Shown here: positions 8,329 to 62,717 of the stretch, one piece after another
Layout of the letters: every line of letters begins with the position of its first letter
Numbering within the stretch: position 1 is the stretch's first letter
Source of the DNA: Octopus bimaculoides
Lineage: Eukaryota
Length of the DNA stretch: 62,845 nt
Reading direction: 5' to 3'
NCBI RefSeq assembly: GCF_001194135.2
Contig: NC_068981.1
Location: 70,665,386 to 70,728,230, forward strand
Program-made: the position numbers and the translations under genes
The notes under the pieces: model-generated
Database searches by the model: none
The model's input: only the letters and a program-made list of their open reading frames with translations
What the model was told of the DNA's origin: nothing

Positions 8329-11300
8329 TTGTGAGTCGGAAGTATTATTGCTGAAGTGCGTCTGTATAGTAAGTGTAGTTTCTGTTTCCGTGTTGCTGCT
8401 TGTTATATTTGCTGTACCTGTATTAAATTTGTACAATAGTTTATATTCGAAAAACTATTGTGTATTTTCCCCTGTAGAGGGAAACATTAATTGCTGGCAA
8501 GATGCCAAAAAAGTCTGTCTTCGTCTGCCGAGGAATCGACAGATTTAGATGCTAAAAAAGTTGAAAAAATGTTATTGAAAGATGTGTCAGATTCGTCTAA
8601 AAATGAGTTCCCATTATTGCCAAGGGCTCCCGTTGCAAGGAGGAACATCGAGGTGAATAGCCTTCAAACGGAGGAAGGCAAACAGAAAAGAAGTTTTGTC
8701 TCTGCAGCTGGAGATAGAACCCGCCAACTGTCGACAAATAAAAGTGAATTGTTGATGTAGAAGGACATTGATTACAGTTCAAGACGGCGTTGTCAAGGTT
8801 CAACCCTCAGAGGAGTTTTTATTGTCAGAGATTTTAACCAATCTATTTTCCAAGACCTGCCATCTTCGACCCTGTATCAAGAAAAGGTGGAAGGTCCCTC
8901 TCCACCAGACAGCCCTGATTAACAGATTAACAGATAAGTGATATCTATTCACATTCGGTGTATAAATGTTCGTGGCCTGTCTAGCTGGAAGCAAATGACA
9001 TCAGGTCAAGACATCAGGTCAAGAAAATTGTATGTGATTGTTGCAACGGAAACCCGGGTAAAGGGGCCAAGAGATCTGTGCCTCCTCCTGAATGGCTATG
9101 AGAAATACGTTTCCCCGAGTCGGGCGGGAGCTGGGGGTNNNNNNNNNNNNNNNNNNNNNNNNNNNNNNNNNNNNNNNNATCTTACTAAAAAGAAACTAGG
9201 TAGCCGAGAAAAAATTGACTTTTTTGCTGATCCAGAAAGCAAGTTGGTCGTTTTCGACCTGACATTCAGTTGTGGCAAAATAATCAGGCTAGTCGCTATT
9301 TATGCACCCAACATTATGGGCCCGCAAAGTGAATATTTTTGTGACCTGGACAAGTTTGTGGCCACGTTACATTCGCTAGTATTGTTAGGAGACTTTAACA
9401 CAATATGTGACGCACACACAGACTGTGTTGACTCGAACATGAACACAAAATGTAACCCAGGCTTACGGGATCTGCTAAGTCACTTTCAGCTAGCAGGCTC
9501 ATATAGGTTGGAACACCCGAACACTCCACAGTGGACGTGGTCAAACAGTGACGGGTCTTCCAGAACATATCTAGATAGGATTTTAATTAGAGAAACAGAT
9601 AAATTCATAGGTAAGTGTCCACAGTTTTTTTCTTATCAGCTACAGTGACCACAAGATGTTTATCTGTAAACTGACAATAGATTAGTTACATAGTCAGGGA
9701 TCTGGCTACTGGAAACTCAATACGTCCCTTTTGGCGATTGAGGAATACAGAAAGCAGATCAAGATGTTAATACAGGGGGCATTGACAGGTACCTCATTAA
9801 TAACAAATGGTGGTACGCCCTAAAAAGAGCCATCAAATATGAGTCTATTAGGTTTAGCATACGTTTAGCTAAGAAAGGACGTAGAATAGGAGATGGTTTA
9901 TTTAAAGAACTAGAAGAAGCCTGGAGGACTGGTAATGCGGACCAAGCGAGGGGGAAAATACTGGAGTTAAACCAGCATCTTGAAACCCAACATACGGGAA
10001 GTATTGCCAGATAGGAAGTGAAGGAATCAAGGCAGCTGGATGAGCCCGAGTGGTGGAAGCTCGGCAAGGAAATAGTTCCACTATACGGTTTTTGACGAAT
10101 CATAATGGCGTCTTGGTAAACGAACACGAGAAAATGTGTGAGGCCAGCTGTTCGGGGTGACGGCGCTCCTGGTGGTCGGAGAGCCCTCGAGGACTTTCTT
10201 GCCGGGATGCCGTGTCTCTCGGGGTCGGATGCGGAGTCTTGCGAAGGGCCAATCACGCCTGTGGAGGTGATGGAGGCTTTGGCCGACTGTAAAGCGGGTA
10301 AGTCGCCGGGACTTGATAGTCTTACGTACGAGCTGTATAAATGTATGTCAGACTTGTTCGAGCATCTACTGGCTGACGTTTACGTGAACTGGCAACAGAA
10401 TGGGTTTATCCCCAGATTTGTGCGTCGGGGAGTAGTGACGTTGGTCAGAAAGGACCCAGACAAGGGGAATGTTATAGAGAATTTCAGGCCGATCACTCTG
10501 TTAAATACAGAAGTGAAGATTTTGGCCAAGGTCTTAGCGAAAAGGTTGAAGCGTGTCGCGAATGGTATAGTCGCGGAGGCACTGAATATGTGCCATCCGA
10601 GGCAGAATCATTCAGGATACACTCCATGTACCAACCTAAAGCTTTTGATAGGATTGACCGCTTGCGCGGTTCGGCCTGGGCCTTGGCTTCCTTAGGTGGT
10701 TTATCGCTTTGTACCACAACATTGACTCGATAGTTCGGGTGAATGGTTTCCTTTCGAAGCCGCTCTGCATCAGACGTTCGGTTCGTCAAGGATGTCCGCT
10801 CTCACCGCTTTTGTATGCGGTGGCTCTCGAGCCCCTACTGCGAAGGTTGGGTGGAATTCTGAGAGAACTAGGTCTAGAGGAGTTTGTTACGGCTTACGTG
10901 GATGATATGACTATCAGCGTAACATCAGTAGCACGCATACGTGAAGTAAGTGTGACTATTGAGGCTTACGAGGAGGTGGCAGGAGCAAAGATTAACCGGG
11001 AAAAGTCGGTCGGCTTGCATCTCGGCACCTGGTTTGGCAAATCGATGCCTTCAGACAGCGTTGTTGGGCGCTGGACGGAGGGACGTGTTAAGCTGCTGGG
11101 ACTTTGTTTTGGACCAGGCCTTCAGATATAGAAGAACTAGACGGAGGTATTGAACAGGGTGGCTGCAGTAGTCAAGACATGGTCTTTGCGGTGGCTATCC
11201 CTGATAGGGGGGAGGTGGCTAATGTGTTTATCGCATCGGTCATTACCTACTGCTTGACCGTTGTGCCCTGTCCGGATTCGTGGTTGATCAGATTGGAGAG

Positions 11301-16917: not shown

Positions 16918-17158
16918 ATACTAAATTTTATGGTTAGATAGATAATACAGATATAATTATGTTTATTAAGGGATTAATACAGTATTATGAAAATAAAAAT
17001 AGTTGTTATAATTATGCGTCTATAAAAATGTGGTGTTACTGAACAATATGGGATGGGCATGGTTGTATAGGTGCTAATTGATCCGCATACATATAAAAAC
17101 ACACACATATATACTGGATAATGTTATTTGGAAGCAATAATTTTTACCAACTATCTCA

Positions 17159-17476
17159 GATTCCCTCCGGTCACGAATTACTATGGGATTGCACCTAGAA
17201 AGTTACCTTCTGAGGCACGAGCCGGGCAAGGTTGTTTATGGAAGATCAGCAGTCGCCCATGCATACCAGCCACCCTTCTCCACGCCAGCCAAAGGAAAGG
17301 CCGATACAGCTTGGCACCAGTGACGTCGCAGCTCATTTCCACAGCTGAGTGAACTGGGACAACGTAAAATAAAGTGTTAAGCTCAAGAACACAACACGCA
17401 GCCCGGCTCGTGATTCGAACTCTCAACCTCACGGTCGTAAGTTCAACGCTCTGACCACTGAGCCATGAGCCTTCAC
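17159..17476 (-). mobile_element. tRNA-derived SINE (second family, CORE-like middle)
   Basis: Head gtgaaggctcatggctcagtggtcagagcgttgaac..gagagttcgaatc with A and B boxes; gtgttcttgagcttaacactttattttacgttg middle, shared with the 38195 copy. Confidence 0.8.
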
Positions 17477-18579: not shown

Positions 18580-21500
18580 ATATAGTGAAAATTTACAAAA
18601 AAACAAAAGACGAAGACGGGTGTGTAAACGACAAACAGATGTATTACTTTAACGTTCGGGAAGTGAGAAAGTCTTTTCGACAGAAAGGAACAGAGAAAGA
18701 AACAGGGAGAGAAAATAGAAAAGGTTTAGTGGCTAGTGATCTATCATGGCGAATGCCGGACAGAGGGGTCACACGGGAGAGCTAGGAAATAATAAAGTAG
18801 TGGTAATTCCAAAATGAAGGTGCGCGTGCGTGTGTATTTGAGAGCGTATATGTGCGTGTGGGAGGGGGCTGGTGACATTGAAGTGTGCGTGTGTGCATGC
18901 GTATGTATGTGGATGATGATGCAGGTGCTGGGAAGTTGTTAGTGCTTGTGCGTGCGCTAGTGTGGGTGATGGGAAGTGGTCAGTGCTAGTGTGTGCGGGG
19001 TGGTGCGATGTGGTGTGCGGTGGTATGCAGGTGTGTGGTGTGATGGTGTGCGGTGGTGGTGTGATGGTGTGCGGTGGTGGTGTGGTGGTGTGTTAGTGCT
19101 GGGGCATGAGGGAGGCGAGAGTGGGGAAAGCAAGTGTGGGATATAAGGGATGGGAGGGGTGGGATGAGATGTATAGGGACGGTGGCGTCGGAATGTGTAG
19201 GTGTGGGTTAACGAGGGAGGGTGACGATGAAGGGAGGGGGTGGAAGGAAGAAGATGGGTAGGAGTGAAGAAAGGAGGTTGGTGTCAGAGCAAGAGAGGAG
19301 AGGTAGGTGGGAGGAAGTAGGTGTGAGAGGAATAGAGGAGGAGGATGGTTAGATGAAGAGGGGAGGGGAGTTGACCCCATGTAGCGCAAAGGAGCGAAGA
19401 GAGAAGATTCATCTCTGCTCTTGGCGAAAACTGGAGTCCGGATGGACCCTGTGCAAGGAAACTCCGAACACAGACAGTTGTTGTAAATAATGAACGGTAG
19501 AGCGGAATTGGCACGAGATCGCGGTGTCATTGCCGAGTCTAATGTGTCGGAGGTTTTCTGCGAACCGGTCAGCCAAGCGCCGCCCCGTTTGACCGATTTA
19601 AAGAGCAGAATACAGAGAGCAGGAGATTCAGTAGATGACGTTGGTAGAAGTGAAGGTGAAGGAGTCAGTGATATGATAGAGTCAATAATGGGTGCCTGTG
19701 AGGATGGTGGTGTTGGAGAAGTAAGGGTCAGTACGGCAGCTTGGGCTGCAGGGGAACGAGTCGTGTTGGGAGGTTGGTTTAGGGAAGAAGCTGTAGACCA
19801 AGAGTTCTCGTAGGTTGTGGGCTCGTTTGAAGGAGGGGAGGGGTCAGTTAGGGAAAATGTGGAGGGTTAGGACTGGAGGGTTCGGACTGGAGTCACCAGA
19901 AGGCTTGGAGAATGGTGCGCTGGAGAGGTAGCTTGGTGGAATGGTAGGTGAGGGGAAACGGAAAAGGGAGAAGCTGAGGTGCATGCGGGGGGGAGCAAAT
20001 GCACGGTCCATGGAACGTGCTCTGACAAGGGCGGTGTGAATAGTGGTGAATGGATATCCACGTAGGATGAATTGGCGAATTATGAGTCTCAATTTCATGG
20101 TTGTCACTGCACAGTCTGCGTAGACGTAGGAATTTGGAATAGGCGATGGAGAGCTTGGTGTGTTTAGGAGAAGTTGAGGTATGACCGTGAGTGTGTGTTT
20201 GTAGTTGATGGAGGTGGTGAGAGTGGAGTAATGAATGCTGACCGAAATGTCGAGAAAGGCGACTCAGATGTCGTAAATAGTGCAGGAGAAGTGGAGAACA
20301 GGATGGAAAGATTTGATAAAAGAGTGGAAGGAGTTTAGATGATCACGGGAGAGCGAGTTCGCGCTGATACAGTCGGCAATATAACGACCATATAGTTCGT
20401 GAGTGAGACCAGTGAAATTTGAGAATATCTGGGCCTCAACGTAGCCGACGAAAAGGTTTGCATAGTTGGGGACCATTCTCGTTCCCATGTCCACTCCTGA
20501 GAAATGCAGGTAAAAATCACCTTCGAACAAGAAGCAGTTAAGTAAGAGGACAATTTCGGCCAGGCGAAGGAGTATGGATGTGTCAGGTTGGCGGTCGGGT
20601 CGAAGGTCAAGGAAATGTTGGAGTGCACGCAGCTCTTCGTGGCTAGGGATCTCTGTGTATAGGCTCTAGATGTCAAGAGTAAGAGAAGTTTAAAGGGGCC
20701 AGAAGGGAAGAAGGACTTGAACAAACGAAGAGCATGGTTGGTGTCATGGATGTGAGAGGCAAGAGAAGCCACTATGAGGGCAAGTACGCGGTCAAGATAT
20801 CTGGAGATGAGTTCGGCAGTTGCAGGCGGAGACGATGGGGCGGCCAGGGTTGTTAGGTTTGTGGGTTTTGGAGAGGAAGTAAATTGTGGGGATGCAAGGG
20901 GTGCGGAAAATGAGGTTAGAGGCGGTGGGGGACACGGGAGGAGGAGATGAGGTCATGCATAGTGGAGGACACAGTCTGTTGGTAGATGGGCGTGGGGTTG
21001 GAGGCCAGAGAGCAATGGAAGGAGGTGTCTTGAAGTTGGCGGAGAGCTTCCACTTTGTAGACGTCTGCGCGCCACACCACCACGGCCCCACCCTTGTTGG
21101 CCGGTTTTATGTTGATGTCCGTGTGGTGTCGGAGACATCGAAGGGCTGAGAGTTCGGCTGAGGAGATGTTCAGATGTCAGGGACGCTTGGAAAAGTCAAA
21201 TCGGTCCACAGCGCGCTGGCAGGCGCTTGCAAAAAGGATCGACTGCTTAGAACTGGCCAGGAGCTGGCATCCACTGGGTTGGTCGGCGGCCCAGGTCGGT
21301 GAAGCAATCCTCCTCATTTGATGCAGGTGGAGTGTTGCGGAAAAGCGCACACAACCTAACGTGGCGCACAAAGCTGTGGATTTCGGCACGAACCCGATAT
21401 TCATTGCAGGATGGAGTGAGGGGGTAGTAGCGCAGACCCCTACTGAGGAGGGAGCGCTCCGCCTCAGAGAGGAGAAAATCTGGAGGAATGGTGACAACAG

Positions 21501-22632
21501 ACTGAAGTGGAGAAGTGTTGGATGATACCGAAATAGGAGGGGTGGTGGAAGGCTAGGAGGGGGGAGGAGCGTATCAGGGAGGGAGAGAGGTAAGGGAGGA
21601 GTTGGGGTAGTGGCATCGGGTGTGATGGAATGGTGGAGTGAGTGGAGTTTCCCTTGGTTGGTGTGAGCTAGAAATTGAAGAAAGAGATGATTTAAATGAA
21701 TTATGTAACGTAAAGTAGTGCTGGCGTGGGAGGGCAACTGAGAGGAGAAGAAGATGGAAAAAGCAAGAGGGAGAAGGCGGTCGATGGTGTGTATTTTGAA
21801 GAGATTAGAACGAATGGTGGCGCGCATAAGGTGGTAGGATACAGTACGGAGTGTAGTTAGGATGGTTGAAGCAGAGTGGAGAGTGGGGTGGAAATGGAGG
21901 CTGAAACTTTAGGGATGAGGCGGCGATGAAGGAAGCGACTGAGAAAGGAAACGTGGCTAGAGAAGCGTGTTTTTTGAAAAAAAGGAGGGTAAGTTTAATA
22001 GAAGGTTCAGAGCAGCGGAAAGAAAGTGTGGAAAGGTGTTTTTTTTTTTAGGCGGTGGTGAAGGTAGAGAAGGAAAGGTTTGTAATCAGGCATGATTGAA
22101 AAACGAGAAGAGAGAGAAAGGAGAAAAAAGAAAAAAAGCGAGAGATAAAGGTAAATAAAGACGTGAGGAGCAAAATTCAAAAGTTATGGGGAGAAAAAAT
22201 GCGAAAGACGCGAGGAGAAAAATGCAAAATGCGTGAGGAGAAAAAATACAAAAAGCCTGAGGAGGAAAAAATACAAGAAGTGGGAGGAGAAAAAAAAATA
22301 AAAACAAGGAGAGAAAGAAGGAGGAAGAAGGAAGAAACATAGAGAAAGGGGAAGAAAGGGAGAATAGAAGACAAAAGGGAAAAAGAAGGGAGGGAGAGAG
22401 AGGCATGGTAACAAGTCCGGATTGAGAGAGACGACAATAGAAAAAAACAGAAAGTACAAACAAGTTTAGAAAAGTTCAAAAGGTTCAAACGTCGTGGTGT
22501 ATTGGAGCGATTTCTCATCAAAGGAAAAGTCCACAGTGTAATCCATGGGTAGGAGAGGTGCAGCCGAAGTGTAGGAGACCGAGTGTAGGAGAGTAGAAAG
22601 ACAAGGTAGAGAATCCAGGTAGAATAGTCCAA
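18580..22632 (-). mobile_element. Near-full-length decayed Penelope-like retroelement (RT + GIY-YIG endonuclease + 3' pseudo-LTR)
   Basis: SHIHDTNHAL, TLDI*SLYTEIP, GVDMGTRMVPNYANLFVGYVE, LYGRYIADCI, RGYP, and NVIY*ISCSL..IGQTGRRLADRFAE (GIY-YIG); (CAC/ACC)-rich 3' UTR; terminal repeat matching 51600-51890. Confidence 0.93.
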
Positions 22633-22634
22633 TA

Positions 22635-22686
<52 letters not shown>

Positions 22687-22711
22687 CACTAACAGAGCGT
22701 TATTTCCAAAC

Positions 22712-23052
22712 ACTTCATTTCACGCAGCCCTCGTCAACCACCAATCATTGTAAAAAATTGATATATTCAAGGCAAAAATAACATTTTCGTTTACTTTAAT
22801 GCAAACAATAAAACAATAAAATATTTTTCCAAAATTAATCTCGAATCACTGGACAATTTTTATGTAACTGGACCCTGAATTAAATTCCTTTGAATTTTTT
22901 GAAGTGTTTGCATGAAATGTCAAGATATAGTTGTTTAAAATAGTTTTCTTTAGTCTTAAATCTTGTATAGAATTCTGAAGTATTTTAATGTGATGTGTCA
23001 TCAGTATTTAGTAATATGTTTTAAATGTTAAATATATGGATTCATGTGGGTG
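22712..23052 (-). repeat. Second copy of the 17820-18190 segment (direct repeat flanking the Penelope element)
   Basis: Shared runs such as gtttactttaatg.aaacaataaaatatttt, gtaactggaccct, gaagtgtttgcatgaaatgtcaa, gtgtcatcagtatttagtaa and aaatatatggattcatgtgg. Confidence 0.85.
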
Positions 23053-53166: not shown

Positions 53167-53179
53167 TCAGTAATAATCA

Positions 53180-53330
53180 TAATCCTTTCTACTATAGGCA
53201 CGAGGCCTAAAATTTAGCGGGAGGGGGCTGGTCGATTGTATCGACCTCAATGCTCGACTGGTACTCATTTTATCGACTCCGACAGGATGAAAGGCATAGT
53301 CCACTTCGATGGAATTTGAACTCAGAACGT
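53180..53330 (-). mobile_element. Headless main-family SINE body just downstream of the LINE 3' end
   Basis: Starts acgttctgagttcaaattcc; separated from the LINE tail (53401) by about 70 nt of simple repeat. Confidence 0.85.
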
Positions 53331-53400
53331 TAATAATGATAACATTGATGATGATGATGATGATGATGATCCAGAGGAGGAGGAGAAGAAGAAGTATAAG

Positions 53401-54391
53401 CTTTTCTTTATTGAACACAAGGACTAAACACAAAACATAAAGGGACAATAGAAAATAAGGGATGAATGGAGCTAAGCACAAAACTTCGTATATACAATTA
53501 AGACAATGACAATTGACAACAAAATTTACACATTAATATTCCCTTAATGTAGCGAGTTCGAACCGGGACCGACCAACCTTATCACCTAGAGATCCAAGTA
53601 CACCTCAGTTAGTTACCTCTCTCCTGCTCACCTCTCCTGCTTAGATGCGTATGTTCAGAATAGGCCCATTCACACAGGCCATCGTCGCCGCAAATTACAT
53701 ATACCCGCCTTTGAACAAAACTACTGGGTGGAGTGAGCACTTCTTTCTCCACCCTCACTTTTCTTTTAAAGTGGAAGTTGAAAAAGTCAATGGGGTTTTG
53801 ATAGAAGCGGAAAATATGTTTTCTCTCCTTTCATCCTTGTCCATCTCACTAACTCTCTTGCCATAGTCCCCAAACTGAGGAAAACTGCCTGCTGATGCTG
53901 GCCAATAGAAGACGACGCGGCGATACTTTGATAACCTGATCCACAGTTGATCGATAAAGCTCCACAAATCAGCAATGCCGAGACACGGGACGAATGCATG
54001 CGGAGCGGTTTAATCTCCCTGCATACGTCTCGAACAAGTTCGTCTGACAGCATGCCTGTGCTTGCACAGATTATTTAGAAACGGCAGAGACCGTCGGTAA
54101 TAATGCCAAGCCAGAGATCTCTGGAAATTATCCATAGACTGCGGCACGAAAGTCCTCTGGACACTACCAGCTAATTCATATTTCCCGACGCCTAGAGTTT
54201 CCCCGAGGACATTGTCGCTATTGCCCGTCACTAATTCCCTAAATAACTCCAATGTGGAACTTCCACCAACCAGAAGGCAGAACCGAACCTGACCGCCGTA
54301 AGGACAACCTCCAAGTATTGAACCTCGGCCCTATCAAAAACTTATGATTAATCAAAATTCATCAGAGACCCACTCACGTCAGGTTCCTTAG

Positions 54392-54453
<62 letters not shown>

Positions 54454-54985
54454 GTAACGCGTACGTTGGAGGTTGTTGTAGATGATCTATTTGAGGCAGA
54501 GCATGACCGCGCATCACCGACTAGTTTATCGAAAACAAGTGCCAGACTCGTGGCTAACACATTGGCAAAAATACTGTAATCTGCGTTCGGCAGAGTTACG
54601 GGCCTAAATTTGTTTGATTGGTTCCCATGTTTCGGGTCCTTTCTCAACAGCACCACCACACCGCGGCTCGCAGCACTAGGATTTCTCTCATTATTCTTCC
54701 CGTGTGATGGACATCACCTTGCATGTCTAGCATATGAAAATAAAGTCCAAAGGACAAGCATCTTGTCCCAAAGACTTTTCCTTTGTTCAGCTGGTCATCG
54801 CGTCCCGTATGTCTTCGGCTGTTATCGGCATATCACAGTACTCATCATCTCTGCCGAAAGGTGCGGCAAGCCTTAAAGTAGGAGGGGAAACTTCCCTCAT
54901 CTCTGACTCAGCGCGTGCTACGCACAGTTCGGCAAAGTGTCGCTGACATTCTGCACACATTTGCTTGGATTCGAGTAGCATGCCC
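53401..54985 (-). mobile_element. Tx1/L1-clade LINE, 5'-truncated and internally deleted (RT start fused to C-terminal zinc-finger region and 3' tail)
   Basis: EMPITAEDIRDAM, VVLLRKDPKHGNQSNKFRPVTLPNADYSIFANVLA, KEPDVSGSLMNFD; LGETLG..DNFQRSLAW..RRSLP..RTC; tail tgtttagtccttgtgttcaataaagaaa. Confidence 0.88.
54395..54450. repeat. (CT)28 microsatellite inside the LINE RT coding sequence
   Basis: Read directly from the sequence; RT sequence continues on both sides. Confidence 0.95.
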
Positions 54986-57084: not shown

Positions 57085-57339
57085 ATACGGATCAGAAGAG
57101 TGAAGTGAGTTCATATAAAGACTTGCACTATTCACCTTTGAGTGGGCTGCTTCATTTTCAAACTGATTTGATCTACATATATATGCATACAAAAAATAGC
57201 AATATGTACACCTATTGTTTATGCAATTAAATTATACAAGCTTATTTTATTTTAGTAATTTTAGTTTACTTTATGTAATATATACATTATGTACATTATT
57301 TAAAATTGACGAATATTTGTCCTCATCTTGATTGTTGTT

Positions 57340-57385
57340 AACACAACGTTTCGGCTGATATGTCCTCCAGCCTTCATCAGGTGCC
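57340..57385 (-). ncRNA. Minimal type I hammerhead ribozyme (left arm)
   Basis: GGCAC-CTGATGA-A-GGCTG(gaggacatat)CAGCC-GAAA-CGT-T/GTGTT; intact core. Confidence 0.85.
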
Positions 57386-57545
57386 ATGGGGAAATTTCGA
57401 ACCTGGGTACTCATTCCTAAGGTATTTTTCGATGTTTCTTATAATTATTATCATTATTATTATTATTCAGGTCACAGCCTGGAACCGAACTCGTCATTTT
57501 GGGGTAAGCAACCCGCGCTCTTAATTACTACGCACACTTGCATAT

Positions 57546-57608
57546 GGCGTAGTGGTTAAGAGCGCGAGCTACTAACCCCAAGATTCCGAGTTTGATTCCA
57601 GGAAGTTT

Positions 57609-57612
<4 letters not shown>
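57546..57612 (+). promoter_or_regulatory. tRNA-derived Pol III internal promoter (SINE head, tRNA-Ser-like; not a functional tRNA)
   Basis: A box tggcgtagtgg and B-box-like gagtttgattcc. The mirror copy on the minus strand (57467-57533) has gagttcggttcc and an anticodon-like loop ttgctta. Confidence 0.7.
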
Positions 57613-57678
<66 letters not shown>

Positions 57679-57727
57679 CATCAAAAAATACCTTAGGAAT
57701 AAGAACCCAGGTTCGAAATTTCCCCAA

Positions 57728-57773
57728 GACACCTGATGAAGGCTGGAGGGTATATCAGCCGAAACGTTGTGTT
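57728..57773 (+). ncRNA. Minimal type I hammerhead ribozyme (right arm); predicted cleavage after 57768
   Basis: GACAC-CTGATGA(57733-57739)-A-GGCTG(gagggtatat)CAGCC-GAAA(57761-57764)-CGT-T/GTGTT; palindromic ACGT forms helix III. Confidence 0.88.
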
Positions 57774-59639
57774 AACATTAAACAAGATGAAGACAAATAT
57801 CCGTCAATTGTACATAATGTAAATAATGTACATAATTTCTCGTCTCTTAAATATAGAACGGCTATGTAATATATGTTATATAAATTTAGCTAAAAATGGA
57901 CAACGCACTCATTTTGGATTAATTTAAGTCATTTTAGACTGTTTAACTTTACCTTTCTGCCCAATTAATTTATGTTGTATGTATATTATTACTGATACTT
58001 TATTACTACTTTCTGATTTTAATTATATTTTTAAACTAATTATTATTTTAATTATAATGATCTAATTTTGGTGATAACAATAATATTGCGCTGCGGCTTT
58101 CAAAATTGAAAAAATAAATTGAAATAGTTACAAAAATTTAAATAAATTAATTATAGTATAAATGAAATAAAAAATGAATATTTTTATCACTGTTAATAAT
58201 TTGAAATTAAAAATCTTTTTCCTGCTTGATAATTTCTATACATTATTGCAATTCTTAATNNNNNNNNNNNNNNNNNNNNNNNNNNNNNNNNNNNNNNNNN
58301 NNNNNNNNNNNNNNNNNNNNNNNNNNCTTAATCTTTGTTTGATCAAGTGTTTTTGTCGTTTTGTTGTAACAGTAGTTAGTTACCATCTTTTTTCTGCCTT
58401 AAAATGTTCATTAGTTTTGTATGTATTTAAAATTTAAATTATAAATGTTTTAAAATTCTTTAAAATGTGCAACAAAATGCGTTTTATTAAATTCTTCTAA
58501 GAAATACTTTTAAGAAATATTAGTGATTTTCTTTACAGAAATACCTACTTGTTTCTTTCTCTTTAAAGTTTAATATTGGTTGATATTTTTTCAATAGAGC
58601 ATTTTGTTGAATCCTTTCTTCGTTTTTCAAGAAATGTTTTTCCCATAAAATTTCTTCCTTATTTAGATTATATTTTTTTAAGCATTAAATTTCTTCTCCT
58701 CCTTTCTTTCCCGCGCCACTTTTTCTAATTTTGACAATTCGGCTCTCCAATTGCCACTTTTTGGTCGCGTCTCTTAATCGATCTATTATTATCAATATAG
58801 AATTGATGAAGGAGACAGAGTGAAGTAATTAAATAAATAAAGTTCAACAGTTTAGTAAACTGTAAAGAATACAGCATATCTTGAATATTCTATGCAATAG
58901 AATAGATATTAGCAAATATCCAAAGCTGCTCGAATAAATAGTCAAAAAGTTGGCTGTTGGGTTTCAATGCAATTAGCCTTTTGTTAAAAAGTCTAAATAG
59001 AGCCCAAACCACAAATCGATAGTAAGGACTCAAATGCAGTAAAAACAAACAGATTCAAATCCACAAAAAGTGAAAAGACTCAAGACAAATTGTTCAAAGA
59101 AAGTGTTATTCAAATGAGCAGAGCTGGTCTATTAATATTTCTGACCAGTGAGTCCTAGCCTTTTTTATGAGCGAAAATAAATAATTTGCCGTAGCAAAAG
59201 GAATCAGTCCAGGCTTTTATTTATAAGCACAGGACAGCACTCAATCGGTGCTAGCTGAACCTCTTTGAGGGACAGCAAGCCTGCCTCGGGTGAACAGACA
59301 CACAAGCCCGTGAGCTGAAGTCAGGCGCCTGTCTCAAGTCAAAAAGATTTTGTCCGTGGACAGAGCACAGACAATGTAGAGAGAGGAGTCAAAAATGCAG
59401 CAGCGTTGAAGCCACTCTGTGCACTCAAGCTTGCAGCTCATTCCAACACCTATAATTCAGCTGCCACTGAAAATATAGGTCAGAAATGATAAGCTGAAAA
59501 ATGCAGTGCACAATGCGGTGCAAATGCAAAAGACAGCTGACAAAAATAGCAAAAAATTAGAAAGTATGGAATGGAGAAAAGACCAATAAAACAATAACAA
59601 AATATATTTCATATAAAAATCAAAGATTAACAAAAAAAA

Positions 59640-62061: not shown

Positions 62062-62717
62062 CAAAATAAGGTGATTAGAATCAAAATAAGCAACAAAGGC
62101 ATCAAGAGGTAATGCAGTACGATCGATTTACGCAATTCCATTTAATTGAAAAATTCAACCATTACAGCAGTTTAAATTGCAGAGCAATCCTCAGCTGCAC
62201 AAAGACATAGAAGTTAATTAAATTAAAACAAATGAACACATTTGTATAATTTCGCCTAAAGTCTGCAAGAAGTTAAGGAGATACACAAAGAACATTGTTG
62301 CCTTTCTTTCCACTTAGAAGTTACGAAGTTATCAGGAAGAAAGACTTGTTACAGATTTTGGTTGACACTTTTATATGGAGTCAGCTTTAATTTAGAGACT
62401 AGTTTTATCAAATCCTTGTATATCTAAATCCAGGTCTCTTAGAAAAATTTCTTACAAGTTTTTCTTCCTGATAACTTAGTAACTTCAATGTGGAAGGATG
62501 GGCAACAATGTTCTTTTTCTATCTCCTTAACTTCTTGCAGATTTTAGGCAAAATTATACTAATGTGTCCATCGGTGTGCAGTTGAGGATTGCTCTGCATT
62601 TAAACTGATGAAATGGTTGCATTGGTCAATTAAATGGAGTTGCGTGAAACGATCGTACTGCATCACCTCTGGATATACTTGTTGGTTATTTTGATTCTAA
62701 CCACCTTATTTTGAAAT
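62058..62717. mobile_element. Foldback element with long inverted arms (62058-62349 and 62454-62717) and ~104-nt spacer
   Basis: atttcaaaataaggtg.ttagaatcaaaataa..gcagtacgatcg..gcagagcaatcctca.ctgcac..ctgcaagaagttaaggagata..aacattgttgcc..ttatcaggaagaaa is mirrored on the right. Confidence 0.88.

What the first reader, a model, noticed from the sequence alone, without database searches (positions are those of the whole stretch)
57284..57862. Palindromic tRNA-headed, hammerhead-carrying retroelement inserted as one unit (12-bp TSD)
Seen in the sequence: two inverted units radiate from a ~13-nt centre. Each is a tRNA-like head with A/B boxes, then (AAT)n, a ~55-nt linker, a complete CTGATGA..GAAA hammerhead with palindromic ACGT helix III, and an AT-rich tail. 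A perfect 12-bp direct repeat (tatgtaatatat) brackets the whole palindrome, and the right arm has no TTTT terminator between the head and the ribozyme. Established: Penelope-like elements and retrozymes carry minimal type I hammerheads that cleave as dimers, and SINE heads are Pol III promoters. Inference: this is a SINE-retrozyme hybrid. Pol III would transcribe outward from the centre, the hammerhead would set the 3' end, and the element would be mobilised in trans by GIY-YIG Penelope machinery, which is abundant in this window. I do not know of a described SINE family with this bidirectional tRNA + hammerhead palindrome architecture, but I cannot search the literature.
Basis: partly seen in the sequence, partly recalled or inferred. 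Interest (0 to 1): 0.9.

Follow-up and report, generated by a model that had tools for sequence, protein, structure and literature searches.

The report
Octopus tRNA-headed SINE with Penelope-type hammerhead
The palindrome is real, but it is one head-to-head double insertion of a dispersed octopus short retroelement (tRNA-like head, AAT repeat, Penelope-type hammerhead tail), a cephalopod counterpart of the known schistosome Sm-alpha elements rather than a new kind of bidirectional element.

Summary
Positions 57284-57862 are two inverted units, with arms 82-90% alike. A perfect 12-bp direct repeat brackets them (about 0.2% by chance). Each arm carries an intact minimal type I hammerhead (about 0.01 expected per window).

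It is not a one-off and not a palindromic family. Translating the tail and searching protein databases found copies mis-annotated as ORFs, one of them in Octopus bimaculoides, plus eight independent loci in short-read assemblies. These show a roughly 260-320-nt unit:
- a tRNA-derived head starting CATATGGCGTAGTGG;
- an A/T microsatellite;
- a linker;
- the hammerhead;
- a tail with a conserved 3' end.

Copies occur as monomers, or as a sense copy preceded by an inverted copy of variable length. A 28-nt 3' extension is often present on one side only, and flanking repeats are 7-12 bp. This is the published insertion signature of Penelope-like elements, and the ribozyme has their min-hammerhead features.

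Every copy runs 66-94 nt past the predicted cleavage site. The ribozyme therefore does not set the 3' end of the transposition template. No Penelope remnant in the window shares the tail.

The closest precedent is Sm-alpha/Sj-alpha, tRNA-derived SINE-like elements with hammerheads. Verdict: a new member of a known kind, of moderate interest.

The parts
57272..57283 (.). Left copy of the 12-bp target-site duplication TATGTAATATAT
   Evidence: Read. Chance rate about 0.2%.
57284..57338 (-). Left unit: AT-rich tail. It ends at the ATAATGT repeat and lacks the last 28 nt of the family's 3' end.
   Evidence: Arm alignment; family alignment A4.
57339..57386 (-). Left unit: minimal type I hammerhead. 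Helix I UGGCAC/GUGUUA, core CUGAUGA, bulged A, helix II GGCUGG/UCAGCC, then GAAA-CGU-U.
57387..57442 (-). Left unit: linker, containing CCTTAGGAAT and a B-box-like GGTTCGAAAT.
57443..57467 (-). Left unit: internal microsatellite, an interrupted (AAT)n in the sense orientation.
57468..57533 (-). Left unit: tRNA-derived head. It starts at GCGTAG and so lacks the first 6 nt or so. Its A box is degenerate.
   Evidence: nhmmer E=1.5e-15.
57534..57540 (.). 7-nt filler ACACTTG joining the two 5' ends.
   Evidence: Other copies start at CATATGG, and their junctions to inverted partners also carry 7-16 nt of filler.
57541..57612 (+). Right unit: 5' end CATATG plus tRNA-derived head. A box TGGCGTAGTGG at 57545-57555; degenerate B box AGTTTGATTCC at 57589-57599; hairpin CAGGAA/TTCCTG.
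   Evidence: It aligns along its whole length with the head of an unrelated tRNA-SINE at 17.4 kb.
57613..57672 (+). Right unit: (AAT)20 internal microsatellite.
57673..57727 (+). Right unit: linker.
57728..57773 (+). Right unit: minimal type I hammerhead. Helix I GACAC 57728-32 / GUGUU 57769-73; CUGAUGA 57733-39; bulged A 57740; helix II 57741-46 / 57755-60; GAAA 57761-64; ACGU palindrome. Cleavage is predicted after U57768.
57774..57834 (+). Right unit: AT-rich tail with three copies of the 9-mer GTAMATAAT.
   Evidence: (D7).
57835..57862 (+). Right unit: 28-nt 3' extension ATTTCTCGTCTCTTAAATATAGAACGGC. It is the true 3' end of the family and is absent from the left arm.
   Evidence: Present in P0102 (..SSSLKYRT..), L006 (both arms), L008inv, L009inv, L011, L014 and L016.
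57863..57874 (.). Right copy of the 12-bp target-site duplication.

Best explanation
Positions 57284-57862 are a single old insertion of a dispersed, non-coding octopus retroelement family.

The unit is 322 nt here, about 260-320 nt elsewhere. It consists of:
- a tRNA-derived SINE head with A and B boxes;
- an internal A/T microsatellite;
- a roughly 55-nt linker;
- a Penelope-type minimal type I hammerhead;
- an AT-rich tail ending in ..CTCTTAARTATAGAAC.

Shown: the unit recurs elsewhere with the same module order and the same 5' and 3' ends. Insertions are either monomers or a sense copy joined at its 5' end to an inverted copy of variable length. The two copies are joined through 7-16 nt of filler. 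The last 28 nt are often present on one side only. Flanking duplications are 7-12 bp. In the window both copies happen to be essentially full length, which produces the palindrome.

Inferred: the family is transcribed from the internal Pol III promoter of the head. It is copied in trans by the reverse transcriptase and GIY-YIG endonuclease of a Penelope-like element that recognises the hammerhead-containing 3' module. The two outward-facing 3' ends arise because both ends of the staggered target break prime cDNA synthesis on separate RNA copies. One primes at the RNA's 3' terminus, the other at the internal ATAATGT repeat by microhomology. The two cDNAs are then joined at their 5' ends.

The hammerhead must stay uncleaved in the RNA that is copied, because every insertion contains the 66-94 nt downstream of the cleavage site. 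This agrees with the poor activity of such ribozymes as monomers. Both arms are now decayed pseudocopies, 77-94% alike by segment.
For: Real feature:
- Inverted repeat.
- 12-bp duplication, about 0.2% by chance.
- Two intact hammerheads against 0.01 expected.

Family:
- A profile of the translated 3' module hit 253 representative 'proteins'.
- One is UniRef A0A0L8FV75, Octopus bimaculoides, 80% identical and covering the 28-nt extension.
- DNA of eight independent loci was fetched (two of them from two samples each, 11 contigs in all).
- L008 and L016 carry head + microsatellite + linker + hammerhead + tail in the same order, starting CATATGR.
- L009 and L014 have partly deleted heads.
- The consensus of 12 copies keeps an intact hammerhead and the 3' end.

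Insertion signature:
- L006/7: two arms cut in the linker.
- L008: a 55-nt inverted tail fragment plus a full copy.
- L009/10: an inverted fragment of about 90 nt plus a copy, with the 10-bp duplication ATAAATAGTA around the pair.
- The extension is one-sided in the window, L008 and L009.
- This matches the published description of Penelope-like insertions: an inverted 5'-truncated copy at the 5' end and a 30-40-bp extension often at one end only (PMC8557442).

Ribozyme type:
[quoted passage not shown] These are the features listed for Penelope min-hammerheads, which were also seen as pairs 100-700 bp apart on opposite strands (PMC4209133).

Head:
- A perfect A box in the right arm.
- Full-length alignment with another tRNA-SINE head in the window.
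Against: - No autonomous Penelope-like element with the same 3' module was found. A profile of the module finds nothing else in the window, including the two Penelope remnants.
- Pfam does not recognise those remnants, and their GIY-YIG frame found no homologue.
- Rfam calls neither a hammerhead nor a tRNA, and ARAGORN calls no tRNA.
- B boxes are degenerate in both arms.
- Only eight other loci were seen, all from short contigs of one unidentified sequencing project. Copy number and the share of inverted pairs are therefore unknown.
- Transcription, cleavage and the double-priming step are not tested.
- L006 has no clear duplication.
Confidence: 0.68

Rival explanations
1. One-off chimera. 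A reverse transcriptase switched from a Penelope-derived RNA to an unrelated SINE RNA, and the cDNA snapped back on itself to give a unique palindrome. On this reading there is no family with this composition.
For: No second copy of the head or the hammerhead module exists in the 62.8-kb window. The arms meet symmetrically here and in L006.
Against: The same head + microsatellite + linker + hammerhead + tail order, with the same 5' start, is found in L008 and L016, and partly in L009 and L014. In L008 and L009 the inverted partner is much shorter than the sense copy. A snap-back copy cannot produce that.
Confidence: 0.04
2. A SINE mobilised by a LINE (RTE, CR1 or similar, as for classical tRNA-SINEs). 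On this reading the hammerhead is a passenger fossil, and the inverted pairs arise by twin priming.
For: LINE reverse transcriptase and endonuclease are present in the window. The partner Penelope element is not identified. An internal microsatellite such as (AAT)n is typical of LINE-dependent SINE tails.
Against: Twin priming by LINEs inverts the 5' part of one template. It does not give two copies that both carry the 3' end. The one-sided 28-nt extension, the inverted 5'-truncated partner and the min-hammerhead are all traits described for Penelope-like elements. The microsatellite is internal, not terminal.
Confidence: 0.12
3. A foldback or miniature inverted-repeat DNA transposon whose arms happen to contain SINE and ribozyme fragments.
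For: Long inverted arms flanked by a direct repeat.
Against: Flanking repeats differ in length: 12, 10 and 7 bp. The arms are unequal at the outer end by 28 nt. Monomeric copies have the same ends (L013, L014, L016). Inverted partners vary in length. The 5' ends lie in the centre, joined by filler.
Confidence: 0.03
4. A non-LTR retrozyme. On this reading the unit is excised by hammerhead cleavage, circularised, and copied by rolling-circle reverse transcription.
For: More distant relatives of the 3' module occur as tandem arrays of about 130 nt, with two or three hammerhead-containing repeats in one translated ORF (P0103-P0106, P0109, P0119). Retrozymes are proposed Penelope derivatives (10.64898/2026.07.22.740005).
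Against: None of the nine loci of this family (the window plus eight others) shows tandem units or a permuted tail-to-head junction. Ends are fixed at the head 5' end and the tail 3' end. The two hammerheads here lie on opposite strands, so no single transcript carries two sense copies.
Confidence: 0.06
5. Assembly artefact: a chimeric foldback read.
For: Palindromes are a known artefact of some library types. The window has 13 gaps.
Against: The arms differ at 6-23% of positions by segment, and by 35 nt of microsatellite. No gap lies within 390 nt. Equivalent inverted pairs occur in independent assemblies, each seen in two samples (L006/L007, L009/L010).
Confidence: 0.01

Closest known systems
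Sm-alpha / Sj-alpha SINE-like retroposons of Schistosoma
   Same: Short, non-coding, dispersed, high-copy elements that combine a tRNA-derived head with a type I hammerhead in one unit. Sm-alpha is tRNA-Gln-like (PMC2770079; PMC8490949).
   Different: Different phylum. By my own recollection Sm-alpha carries a canonical, fast-cleaving hammerhead with loop-loop contacts, whereas this one is the minimal Penelope type with a bulged base and an ACGU helix III. This family also has an internal (AAT)n and shows inverted-pair insertions.
Minimal hammerheads in pseudo-LTRs of Penelope-like elements
   Same: The same ribozyme architecture: short helix I, bulged nucleotide after A9, G10.1-C11.1, a palindromic stand-in for helix III. 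It occurs as solitary copies and as pairs on opposite strands 100-700 bp apart (PMC4209133). Three unrelated metagenome contigs carry the identical core CUGAUGAAGGCUG..CAGCCGAAACGU.
   Different: Here the motif sits behind a tRNA-derived head in a roughly 300-nt non-coding unit, not next to an RT-EN reading frame.
Insertion structure of Penelope-like elements (Penelope, Neptune, Naiad, Chlamys)
   Same: An inverted 5'-truncated copy abutting the 5' end, a 30-40-bp extension often at one end only, and a high rate of 5' truncation (PMC8557442).
   Different: No partial tandem (pseudo-LTR) was seen in this family's loci. The element is non-autonomous and Pol III-like.
Animal non-LTR retrozymes
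   Same: Small non-coding elements with type I hammerheads that are thought to depend on Penelope-like elements (PMC7229834; 10.64898/2026.07.22.740005). Distant relatives of this 3' module form tandem arrays.
   Different: Retrozymes are defined by tandem units that are cut out at the ribozyme. This family is dispersed as monomers or inverted pairs with fixed ends, and has a tRNA head.
Octopus tRNA-derived SINEs (OK, OR1, OR2 of Ohshima and Okada 1994; the 'unclassified SINEs' of Octopus vulgaris)
   Same: tRNA-derived SINEs are abundant in octopus: 11.6% of the O. vulgaris genome, mostly unclassified (PMC13282606).
   Different: I could not obtain their sequences, so identity with a named family is untested. 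No searchable paper links an octopus SINE to a hammerhead.

Membership tests
Type I hammerhead ribozyme, Penelope min-HHR variant | Catalytic core CUGANGA ... GAAA, with H17 not G | tested here: met
   Both arms have CUGAUGA, GAAA and U17. The consensus of 12 copies keeps them.
Type I hammerhead ribozyme, Penelope min-HHR variant | Helix I (4-5 bp, open) and helix II closed by a loop, with a G10.1-C11.1 pair | tested here: met
   Helix I GACAC/GUGUU; the left arm's GGCAC keeps pairing through a G-U. Helix II GGCUGG/UCAGCC. This three-way structure is within 0.6 kcal/mol of the minimum free energy.
Type I hammerhead ribozyme, Penelope min-HHR variant | Unpaired nucleotide between A9 and G10.1, and a palindromic 15.2-16.2 in place of a stable helix III | tested here: met
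   A57740 and ACGU 57764-57767. These features are listed in PMC4209133.
Type I hammerhead ribozyme, Penelope min-HHR variant | Match to the curated Rfam hammerhead models | tested here: not met
   No hammerhead hit at the gathering score or at E<=10. Minimal variants lack the helix III that the models expect, so this lowers confidence only slightly.
Type I hammerhead ribozyme, Penelope min-HHR variant | Self-cleavage, as monomer or as dimer | not testable with these tools
   Needs in vitro transcription of one-copy and two-copy constructs.
Type I hammerhead ribozyme, Penelope min-HHR variant | Compensatory changes in the helices across relatives | tested here: inconclusive
   As a proxy I used translated relatives and compared W/Q against R/R at one helix II pair. 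The odds ratio is about 1.3, which CpG decay explains.
tRNA-derived SINE | Internal Pol III promoter: A box TRGCNNAGTGG and B box GGTTCGANNCC at tRNA-like spacing | tested here: inconclusive
   The A box is perfect in the right arm only. Both B boxes have 2 mismatches. Combining the two arms gives 10 of 11. The head aligns with another tRNA-SINE head.
tRNA-derived SINE | Cloverleaf recognisable as a tRNA | tested here: not met
   ARAGORN finds none. Rfam gives no tRNA hit at E<=10. Folds are not better than shuffles. This is usual for old SINE heads.
tRNA-derived SINE | Dispersed copies with a constant 5' end, 5' truncations and target-site duplications | tested here: met
   5' end CATATGG in four copies. 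Truncated copies in L006. Duplications of 12, 10 and 7 bp.
tRNA-derived SINE | 3' end shared with an autonomous partner | tested here: not met
   Nothing else in the window matches the 3' module. A genome-wide test is not possible with these tools.
Element integrated by Penelope-like machinery | Inverted 5'-truncated copy at the 5' end, a one-sided extension of about 30 nt, and a variable duplication | tested here: met
   Window, L006/7, L008 and L009/10, compared with PMC8557442.
Element integrated by Penelope-like machinery | Partial tandem (pseudo-LTR) arrangement | tested here: not met
   No tandem units in any of the nine loci, the window plus eight others.
Non-LTR retrozyme | Tandem units delimited by hammerheads, giving unit-length circular RNA | tested here: not met
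   There are no tandem copies, and the hammerheads lie on opposite strands. Circular RNA is not testable.
MITE / foldback DNA transposon | Identical termini on both sides and a duplication of fixed length | tested here: not met
   The outer ends differ by 28 nt. Duplications are 12, 10 and 7 bp. Monomers exist.

The most novel reading that the evidence does not exclude
The hammerhead in this family may not serve to cut. It may act as an RNA dimerisation and recognition module. Two SINE RNAs would pair through the palindromic ACGU helix III and be delivered together to a staggered break made by a Penelope GIY-YIG endonuclease. Each DNA end would then prime on one RNA. This would explain the head-to-head double insertions with 3' ends outward, and more generally the long-unexplained inverted structures of Penelope-like elements. 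It would also make this the first clear case of a Pol III SINE that lives on Penelope machinery, and possibly a sizeable part of the 'unclassified SINEs' that fill about a tenth of octopus genomes.
Probability: 0.12. Interest if true: 0.75.

Novelty: new member of a known kind. Interest (0 to 1): 0.45.

Why it matters
Octopus genomes are about 12% SINEs, most of them unclassified, and they carry active Penelope-like elements. A SINE family whose 3' module is a Penelope-type hammerhead, and whose insertions bear the Penelope signature, would be direct evidence that Penelope enzymes mobilise Pol III transcripts in trans. It would extend the Sm-alpha precedent from flatworms to molluscs.

Because the unit is only about 300 nt, complete double insertions can be read end to end, with both junctions, the filler and the duplication. 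This gives unusually clean material for working out how Penelope-like elements generate inverted copies and one-sided extensions, which the field still calls unexplained.

There is also a practical point. Translated hammerhead repeats are present in protein databases as hundreds of 'uncharacterised proteins'.

Tried and rejected
- Rfam at the gathering score and at E<=10: no hammerhead and no tRNA; only chance hits to sca_ncR20, snoZ196, MIR1428 and CrcZ.
- ARAGORN: nothing.
- blastn and nhmmer of the unit against the window: no further copy, only (AAT)n microsatellites.
- Hammerhead-core scan of viral contigs: nothing.
- Hammerhead-core scan of metagenome contigs: three contigs with the same core but unrelated flanks, so not the same family.
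- LINE RT as bait for more host DNA: it led to another organism's assembly (ERZ21867824) with no copy of the element.
- The window's GIY-YIG frame as bait: no homologue found.
- Pfam on ten Penelope-like frames: nothing.
- P0102 (O. bimaculoides): could not be traced to a contig.
- Run accessions SRR118693xx: not traceable to a species in the literature.
- Covariation proxy from translated relatives: no signal beyond CpG decay.
- Homodimer cofold: gives a trivial full duplex and is uninformative.
- Ferbeyre 1998 and Lunse 2017 are not held.
- The 12-bp complementarity between the head (GUUAAGAGCGCGAG) and the 3' extension (CUCGUCUCUUAA), seen, is only partly kept in other copies. I estimate it at about 4-9% by chance, so I do not build on it.
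- L015 has a hammerhead fragment about 600 nt upstream of a decayed GIY-YIG frame. The contig ends there, so I rejected it as proof of an autonomous partner.
Full report
**1. The observation**

The sequence at 57100-58100 contains a large inverted repeat. The arms 57279-57467 / 57646-57834 are 189 nt long and 90% complementary. The arms 57436-57533 / 57547-57644 are 98 nt long and 82% complementary. They surround 13 unpaired bases.

TATGTAATATAT occurs at 57272-57283 and again at 57863-57874. To judge chance, I compared 51-nt windows 590 nt apart along the whole window. An exact match of 12 nt or more occurred at 4 of 1437 places. One of these is this locus and one is a microsatellite. The direct repeat is therefore very unlikely to be accidental.

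CTGATGA..GAAAC occurs on the + strand at 57733-57765 and on the - strand at 57380-57348. I wrote a permissive descriptor for minimal hammerheads. It allows either a bulge or none, requires helices I and II of at least 4 bp, allows any short helix III, and requires H17 not G. It finds exactly these two sites in the window. First-order Markov simulations of the window give 0.01 sites on average.

The arms are not identical. By segment they are 77% (head), 88% (linker), 93.5% (ribozyme) and about 80-85% (tail) alike. The microsatellites are 60 and 25 nt long. No assembly gap lies within about 390 nt. The palindrome is therefore a genuine old feature of the genome and not an assembly artefact.

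**2. Corrections to the description**

- The right end has 28 nt (57835-57862) between the end of the inverted repeat and the duplication, with no counterpart on the left.
- The A-box consensus is matched perfectly only in the right arm.
- Neither arm's B box comes within one mismatch of GGTTCGANNCC.
- ARAGORN finds no tRNA.
- Rfam finds neither a tRNA nor a hammerhead, even at E<=10 in an 851-nt search.

The head is nevertheless a typical tRNA-SINE head. It aligns over its whole length with the head of an unrelated tRNA-derived SINE at 17.40-17.47 kb, including the 5' end, the A box and the B box.

**3. Finding relatives**

The window holds no second copy, and no eukaryotic genome collection was available. 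A scan of metagenome contigs for the ribozyme core gave three contigs with the identical core but unrelated flanks. This shows only that the core is a common Penelope-type sequence.

What worked was to treat the element as if it were coding. The sense frame of linker + ribozyme + tail is open for 64 codons in the right arm and 55 in the left. I aligned the two translations (A1) and searched 1.84 billion representative proteins. This returned 253 hits at E<=0.001.

The best hit, P0102, is UniRef A0A0L8FV75, an 'uncharacterized protein' of Octopus bimaculoides. Its sequence is MRTQVRNFPKTPDDGWRVYQLKSCINNKQDDKYPSNVNNVHNSSSLKYRTI. It follows the window's unit through the ribozyme and the tail and into the 28-nt extension (..FSSLKYRTA..). 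The extension is therefore part of the family's true 3' end.

Many other hits are two or three tandem 43-residue repeats of a related hammerhead unit. These are retrozyme-like arrays in other animals.

**4. DNA of other copies**

Looking up the contigs that encode nine of these spurious ORFs gave eight independent loci. All come from short-read assemblies of runs SRR11869384-94, whose species I could not identify.

- L016 is a complete monomer. It has CATATGGCATAATGGTTAAAAAC.. (head), an A/T-rich microsatellite, linker, ribozyme, tail and extension.
- L008 has the same order, with a 10-nt deletion in the head.
- L009/L010 and L014 have partly deleted heads.
- L011, L012 and L015 begin inside the microsatellite, where the assemblies break.

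The unit starts at (G)CATATGG in the window's right arm, L008, L009 and L016. So six of the 13 'central' bases of the palindrome (CATATG, 57541-57546) belong to the right unit, and only ACACTTG is filler.

A 12-sequence alignment of the 3' module gives a consensus with an intact ribozyme: GACAC-CTGATGA-A-GGCTGG..TCAGCC-GAAACGTT-GTGTT. Its conserved end is ..ATAATTCCTCATCTCTTAAGTATAGAAC. The composite unit is therefore a family, not a unique chimera.

**5. The palindrome is a mode of insertion, not the element's architecture**

| Locus | Arrangement |
|---|---|
| L013, L014, L016 | Monomers |
| L006/L007 | Two inverted arms, both cut in the linker, joined by 7 nt |
| L008 | 55-nt inverted fragment of tail + extension, 7 nt of filler, then a full sense copy without the extension |
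| L009/L010 | About 90 nt of inverted tail + extension, 16 nt of filler, then a sense copy without the extension. The pair is bracketed by a 10-bp duplication, ATAAATAGTA |
| Window | Both copies essentially full length. The right one has the extension; the left one stops at the ATAATGT repeat |

Craig et al. describe exactly this for Penelope-like elements. [quoted passage not shown] The duplications of 12, 10 and perhaps 7 bp, the unequal outer ends and the existence of monomers rule out a DNA transposon.

In L008 and L009 the inverted partner is far shorter than the sense copy. That is incompatible with a simple snap-back of one cDNA. It fits two independently primed cDNAs joined at their 5' ends. 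This last step is my inference.

**6. The ribozyme**

Its layout is as follows:
- Helix I: GACAC/GUGUU, 5 bp. In the left arm GGCAC keeps the pairing through a G-U.
- Core: CUGAUGA.
- An unpaired A.
- Helix II: GGCUGG/UCAGCC, with an 8-nt loop.
- GAAA, then the ACGU palindrome, then U17.

The predicted cleavage site is after 57768.

[quoted passage not shown] They report pairs of such motifs 100-700 bp apart on opposite strands. They found little or no cleavage by monomers and weak cleavage by dimers (PMC4209133).

In the window the two ribozymes are on opposite strands. No single transcript contains two sense copies, so cleavage in cis as a dimer is impossible at this locus.

More importantly, all 10 copies in the alignment that include the ribozyme continue 66-94 nt past the cleavage site to the conserved 3' end next to the duplication. 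The RNA that was reverse-transcribed was therefore uncleaved.

**7. The partner**

Six-frame reading shows two decayed canonical Penelope-like copies on the - strand. They lie at about 19.1-22.7 kb and 47.7-49.6 kb. The RT motifs include ..MGTRMVPNYANLFVGY.. and ..FLDI... They are followed by a GIY-YIG segment..NVIYCISCSLCPSLYISQMGRRL... This identification is by eye. Pfam did not score the frames, and the GIY-YIG frame found no database homologue.

Neither copy has a recognisable hammerhead or any similarity to the 3' module. The claim that Penelope machinery is present in the window is therefore right, but the specific autonomous partner remains unidentified.

L015 shows a fragment of the family about 600 nt upstream of a decayed GIY-YIG frame in the same orientation. 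The contig ends there, so I treat this only as a lead.

**8. Comparison with what is known**

A tRNA-derived, SINE-like, high-copy element carrying a type I hammerhead is already known. Sm-alpha and Sj-alpha of schistosomes fit this description, and Sm-alpha is derived from tRNA-Gln (PMC2770079; PMC8490949). Non-LTR retrozymes are proposed to be non-autonomous Penelope derivatives (PMC7229834; 10.64898/2026.07.22.740005). This family lacks their defining tandem organisation.

Octopus genomes are rich in SINEs, which make up 11.6% of O. vulgaris and are mostly unclassified. They also carry active Penelope-like elements (PMC13282606). In the searchable literature I found no paper linking an octopus SINE to a hammerhead or to Penelope machinery. 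I could not compare the unit with the OK/OR1/OR2 SINEs of Ohshima and Okada (1994) or with Repbase/Dfam. The family may therefore already have a name without this interpretation.

**9. Verdict**

The finding is real and well observed. It is best described as one double, head-to-head insertion of a cephalopod tRNA-headed SINE whose 3' module is a Penelope-type hammerhead region. It is a new member of a known kind (the Sm-alpha type, with Penelope-type integration), not a categorically new bidirectional architecture.

Confidence by claim:
- About 0.9 that it is a member of a dispersed family with this module order.
- About 0.6-0.7 that Penelope enzymes mobilise it.
- Low (about 0.1) for the speculative idea that the ribozyme's palindromic helix III pairs two template RNAs and thereby causes the double insertions.

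Noticed in passing
window 17150-17472 (- strand): A different tRNA-derived SINE. Its head GGCTCATGGCTCAGTGGTCAGAGCG..GAGAGTTCGAATCACGAGCC has perfect A and B boxes and is followed by a roughly 250-nt body. It is the only other perfect A-box match in the window.
   Followed up: partly
window about 19100-22720 and 47700-49600 (- strand): Two decayed canonical Penelope-like copies, with RT followed by a C-terminal GIY-YIG. Both regions have a strong positive GC skew on the + strand. Pfam calls nothing. No hammerhead, and no similarity to the SINE's 3' module.
   Followed up: partly
window 8938-11131 (+) and about 53170-54713 (-): LINE remnants. Pfam hits to Exo_endo_phos and RVT_1 at 8.9-11.1 kb, and a second RT-like frame near 54 kb. 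The closest database relatives are only 42-56% identical and come from another assembly (ERZ21867824).
   Followed up: partly
protein hits P0103-P0251: Hundreds of predicted 'proteins' in public databases are translations of hammerhead repeats (..TPEEGRRTYRPKRCGNNNKDEDNSPKTLNDKN..). Many are 43-residue tandem repeats, and one is a named UniProt entry of O. bimaculoides. Several (P0112, P0128, P0158, P0217) read through an antisense and then a sense hammerhead, so head-to-head pairs are common in related families too.
   Followed up: partly
L015 34-190 and 780-934: A fragment of the family (microsatellite, linker, decayed hammerhead, tail) lies about 600 nt upstream of, and in the same orientation as, a decayed GIY-YIG coding segment (..CLYVLTCSRCRE*YVG*TKPILRQR..) at the end of the contig. 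This is a possible lead to the autonomous partner.
   Followed up: partly
window 57556-57569 with 57839-57850: Twelve base pairs of complementarity between the head (GUUAAGAG-CGCGAG) and the 3' extension (CUCGU-CUCUUAA) appear in the predicted fold of the right unit. TTAAGAG and CTCTTAA are fairly conserved in other copies, but the match could be chance (about 4-9%).
   Followed up: partly
window 57774-57834 and the duplication 57863-57874: The tail is three copies of a 9-mer (GTAMATAAT). The target site TATGTAATATAT resembles it. The copies that lack the extension (window left arm, L008, L009) all end within this repeat. This suggests priming by microhomology between target and tail.
   Followed up: partly
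window 62605-62650 (+): A third CTGATGA..GAAAC match. It lacks helices I and II and fails the hammerhead descriptor, so it is a chance match.
   Followed up: yes
window 33200-34500 and 51116-51186: Long (AAT)n/(ATT)n microsatellites elsewhere in the window, not attached to any head or hammerhead sequence.
   Followed up: partly
window, 13 runs of N (for example 35315-36106, 46303-46872, 39048-39485): 2991 bases of assembly gaps. ORFs listed across them, such as 35124-36242 on both strands, are artefacts of the Ns.
   Followed up: no
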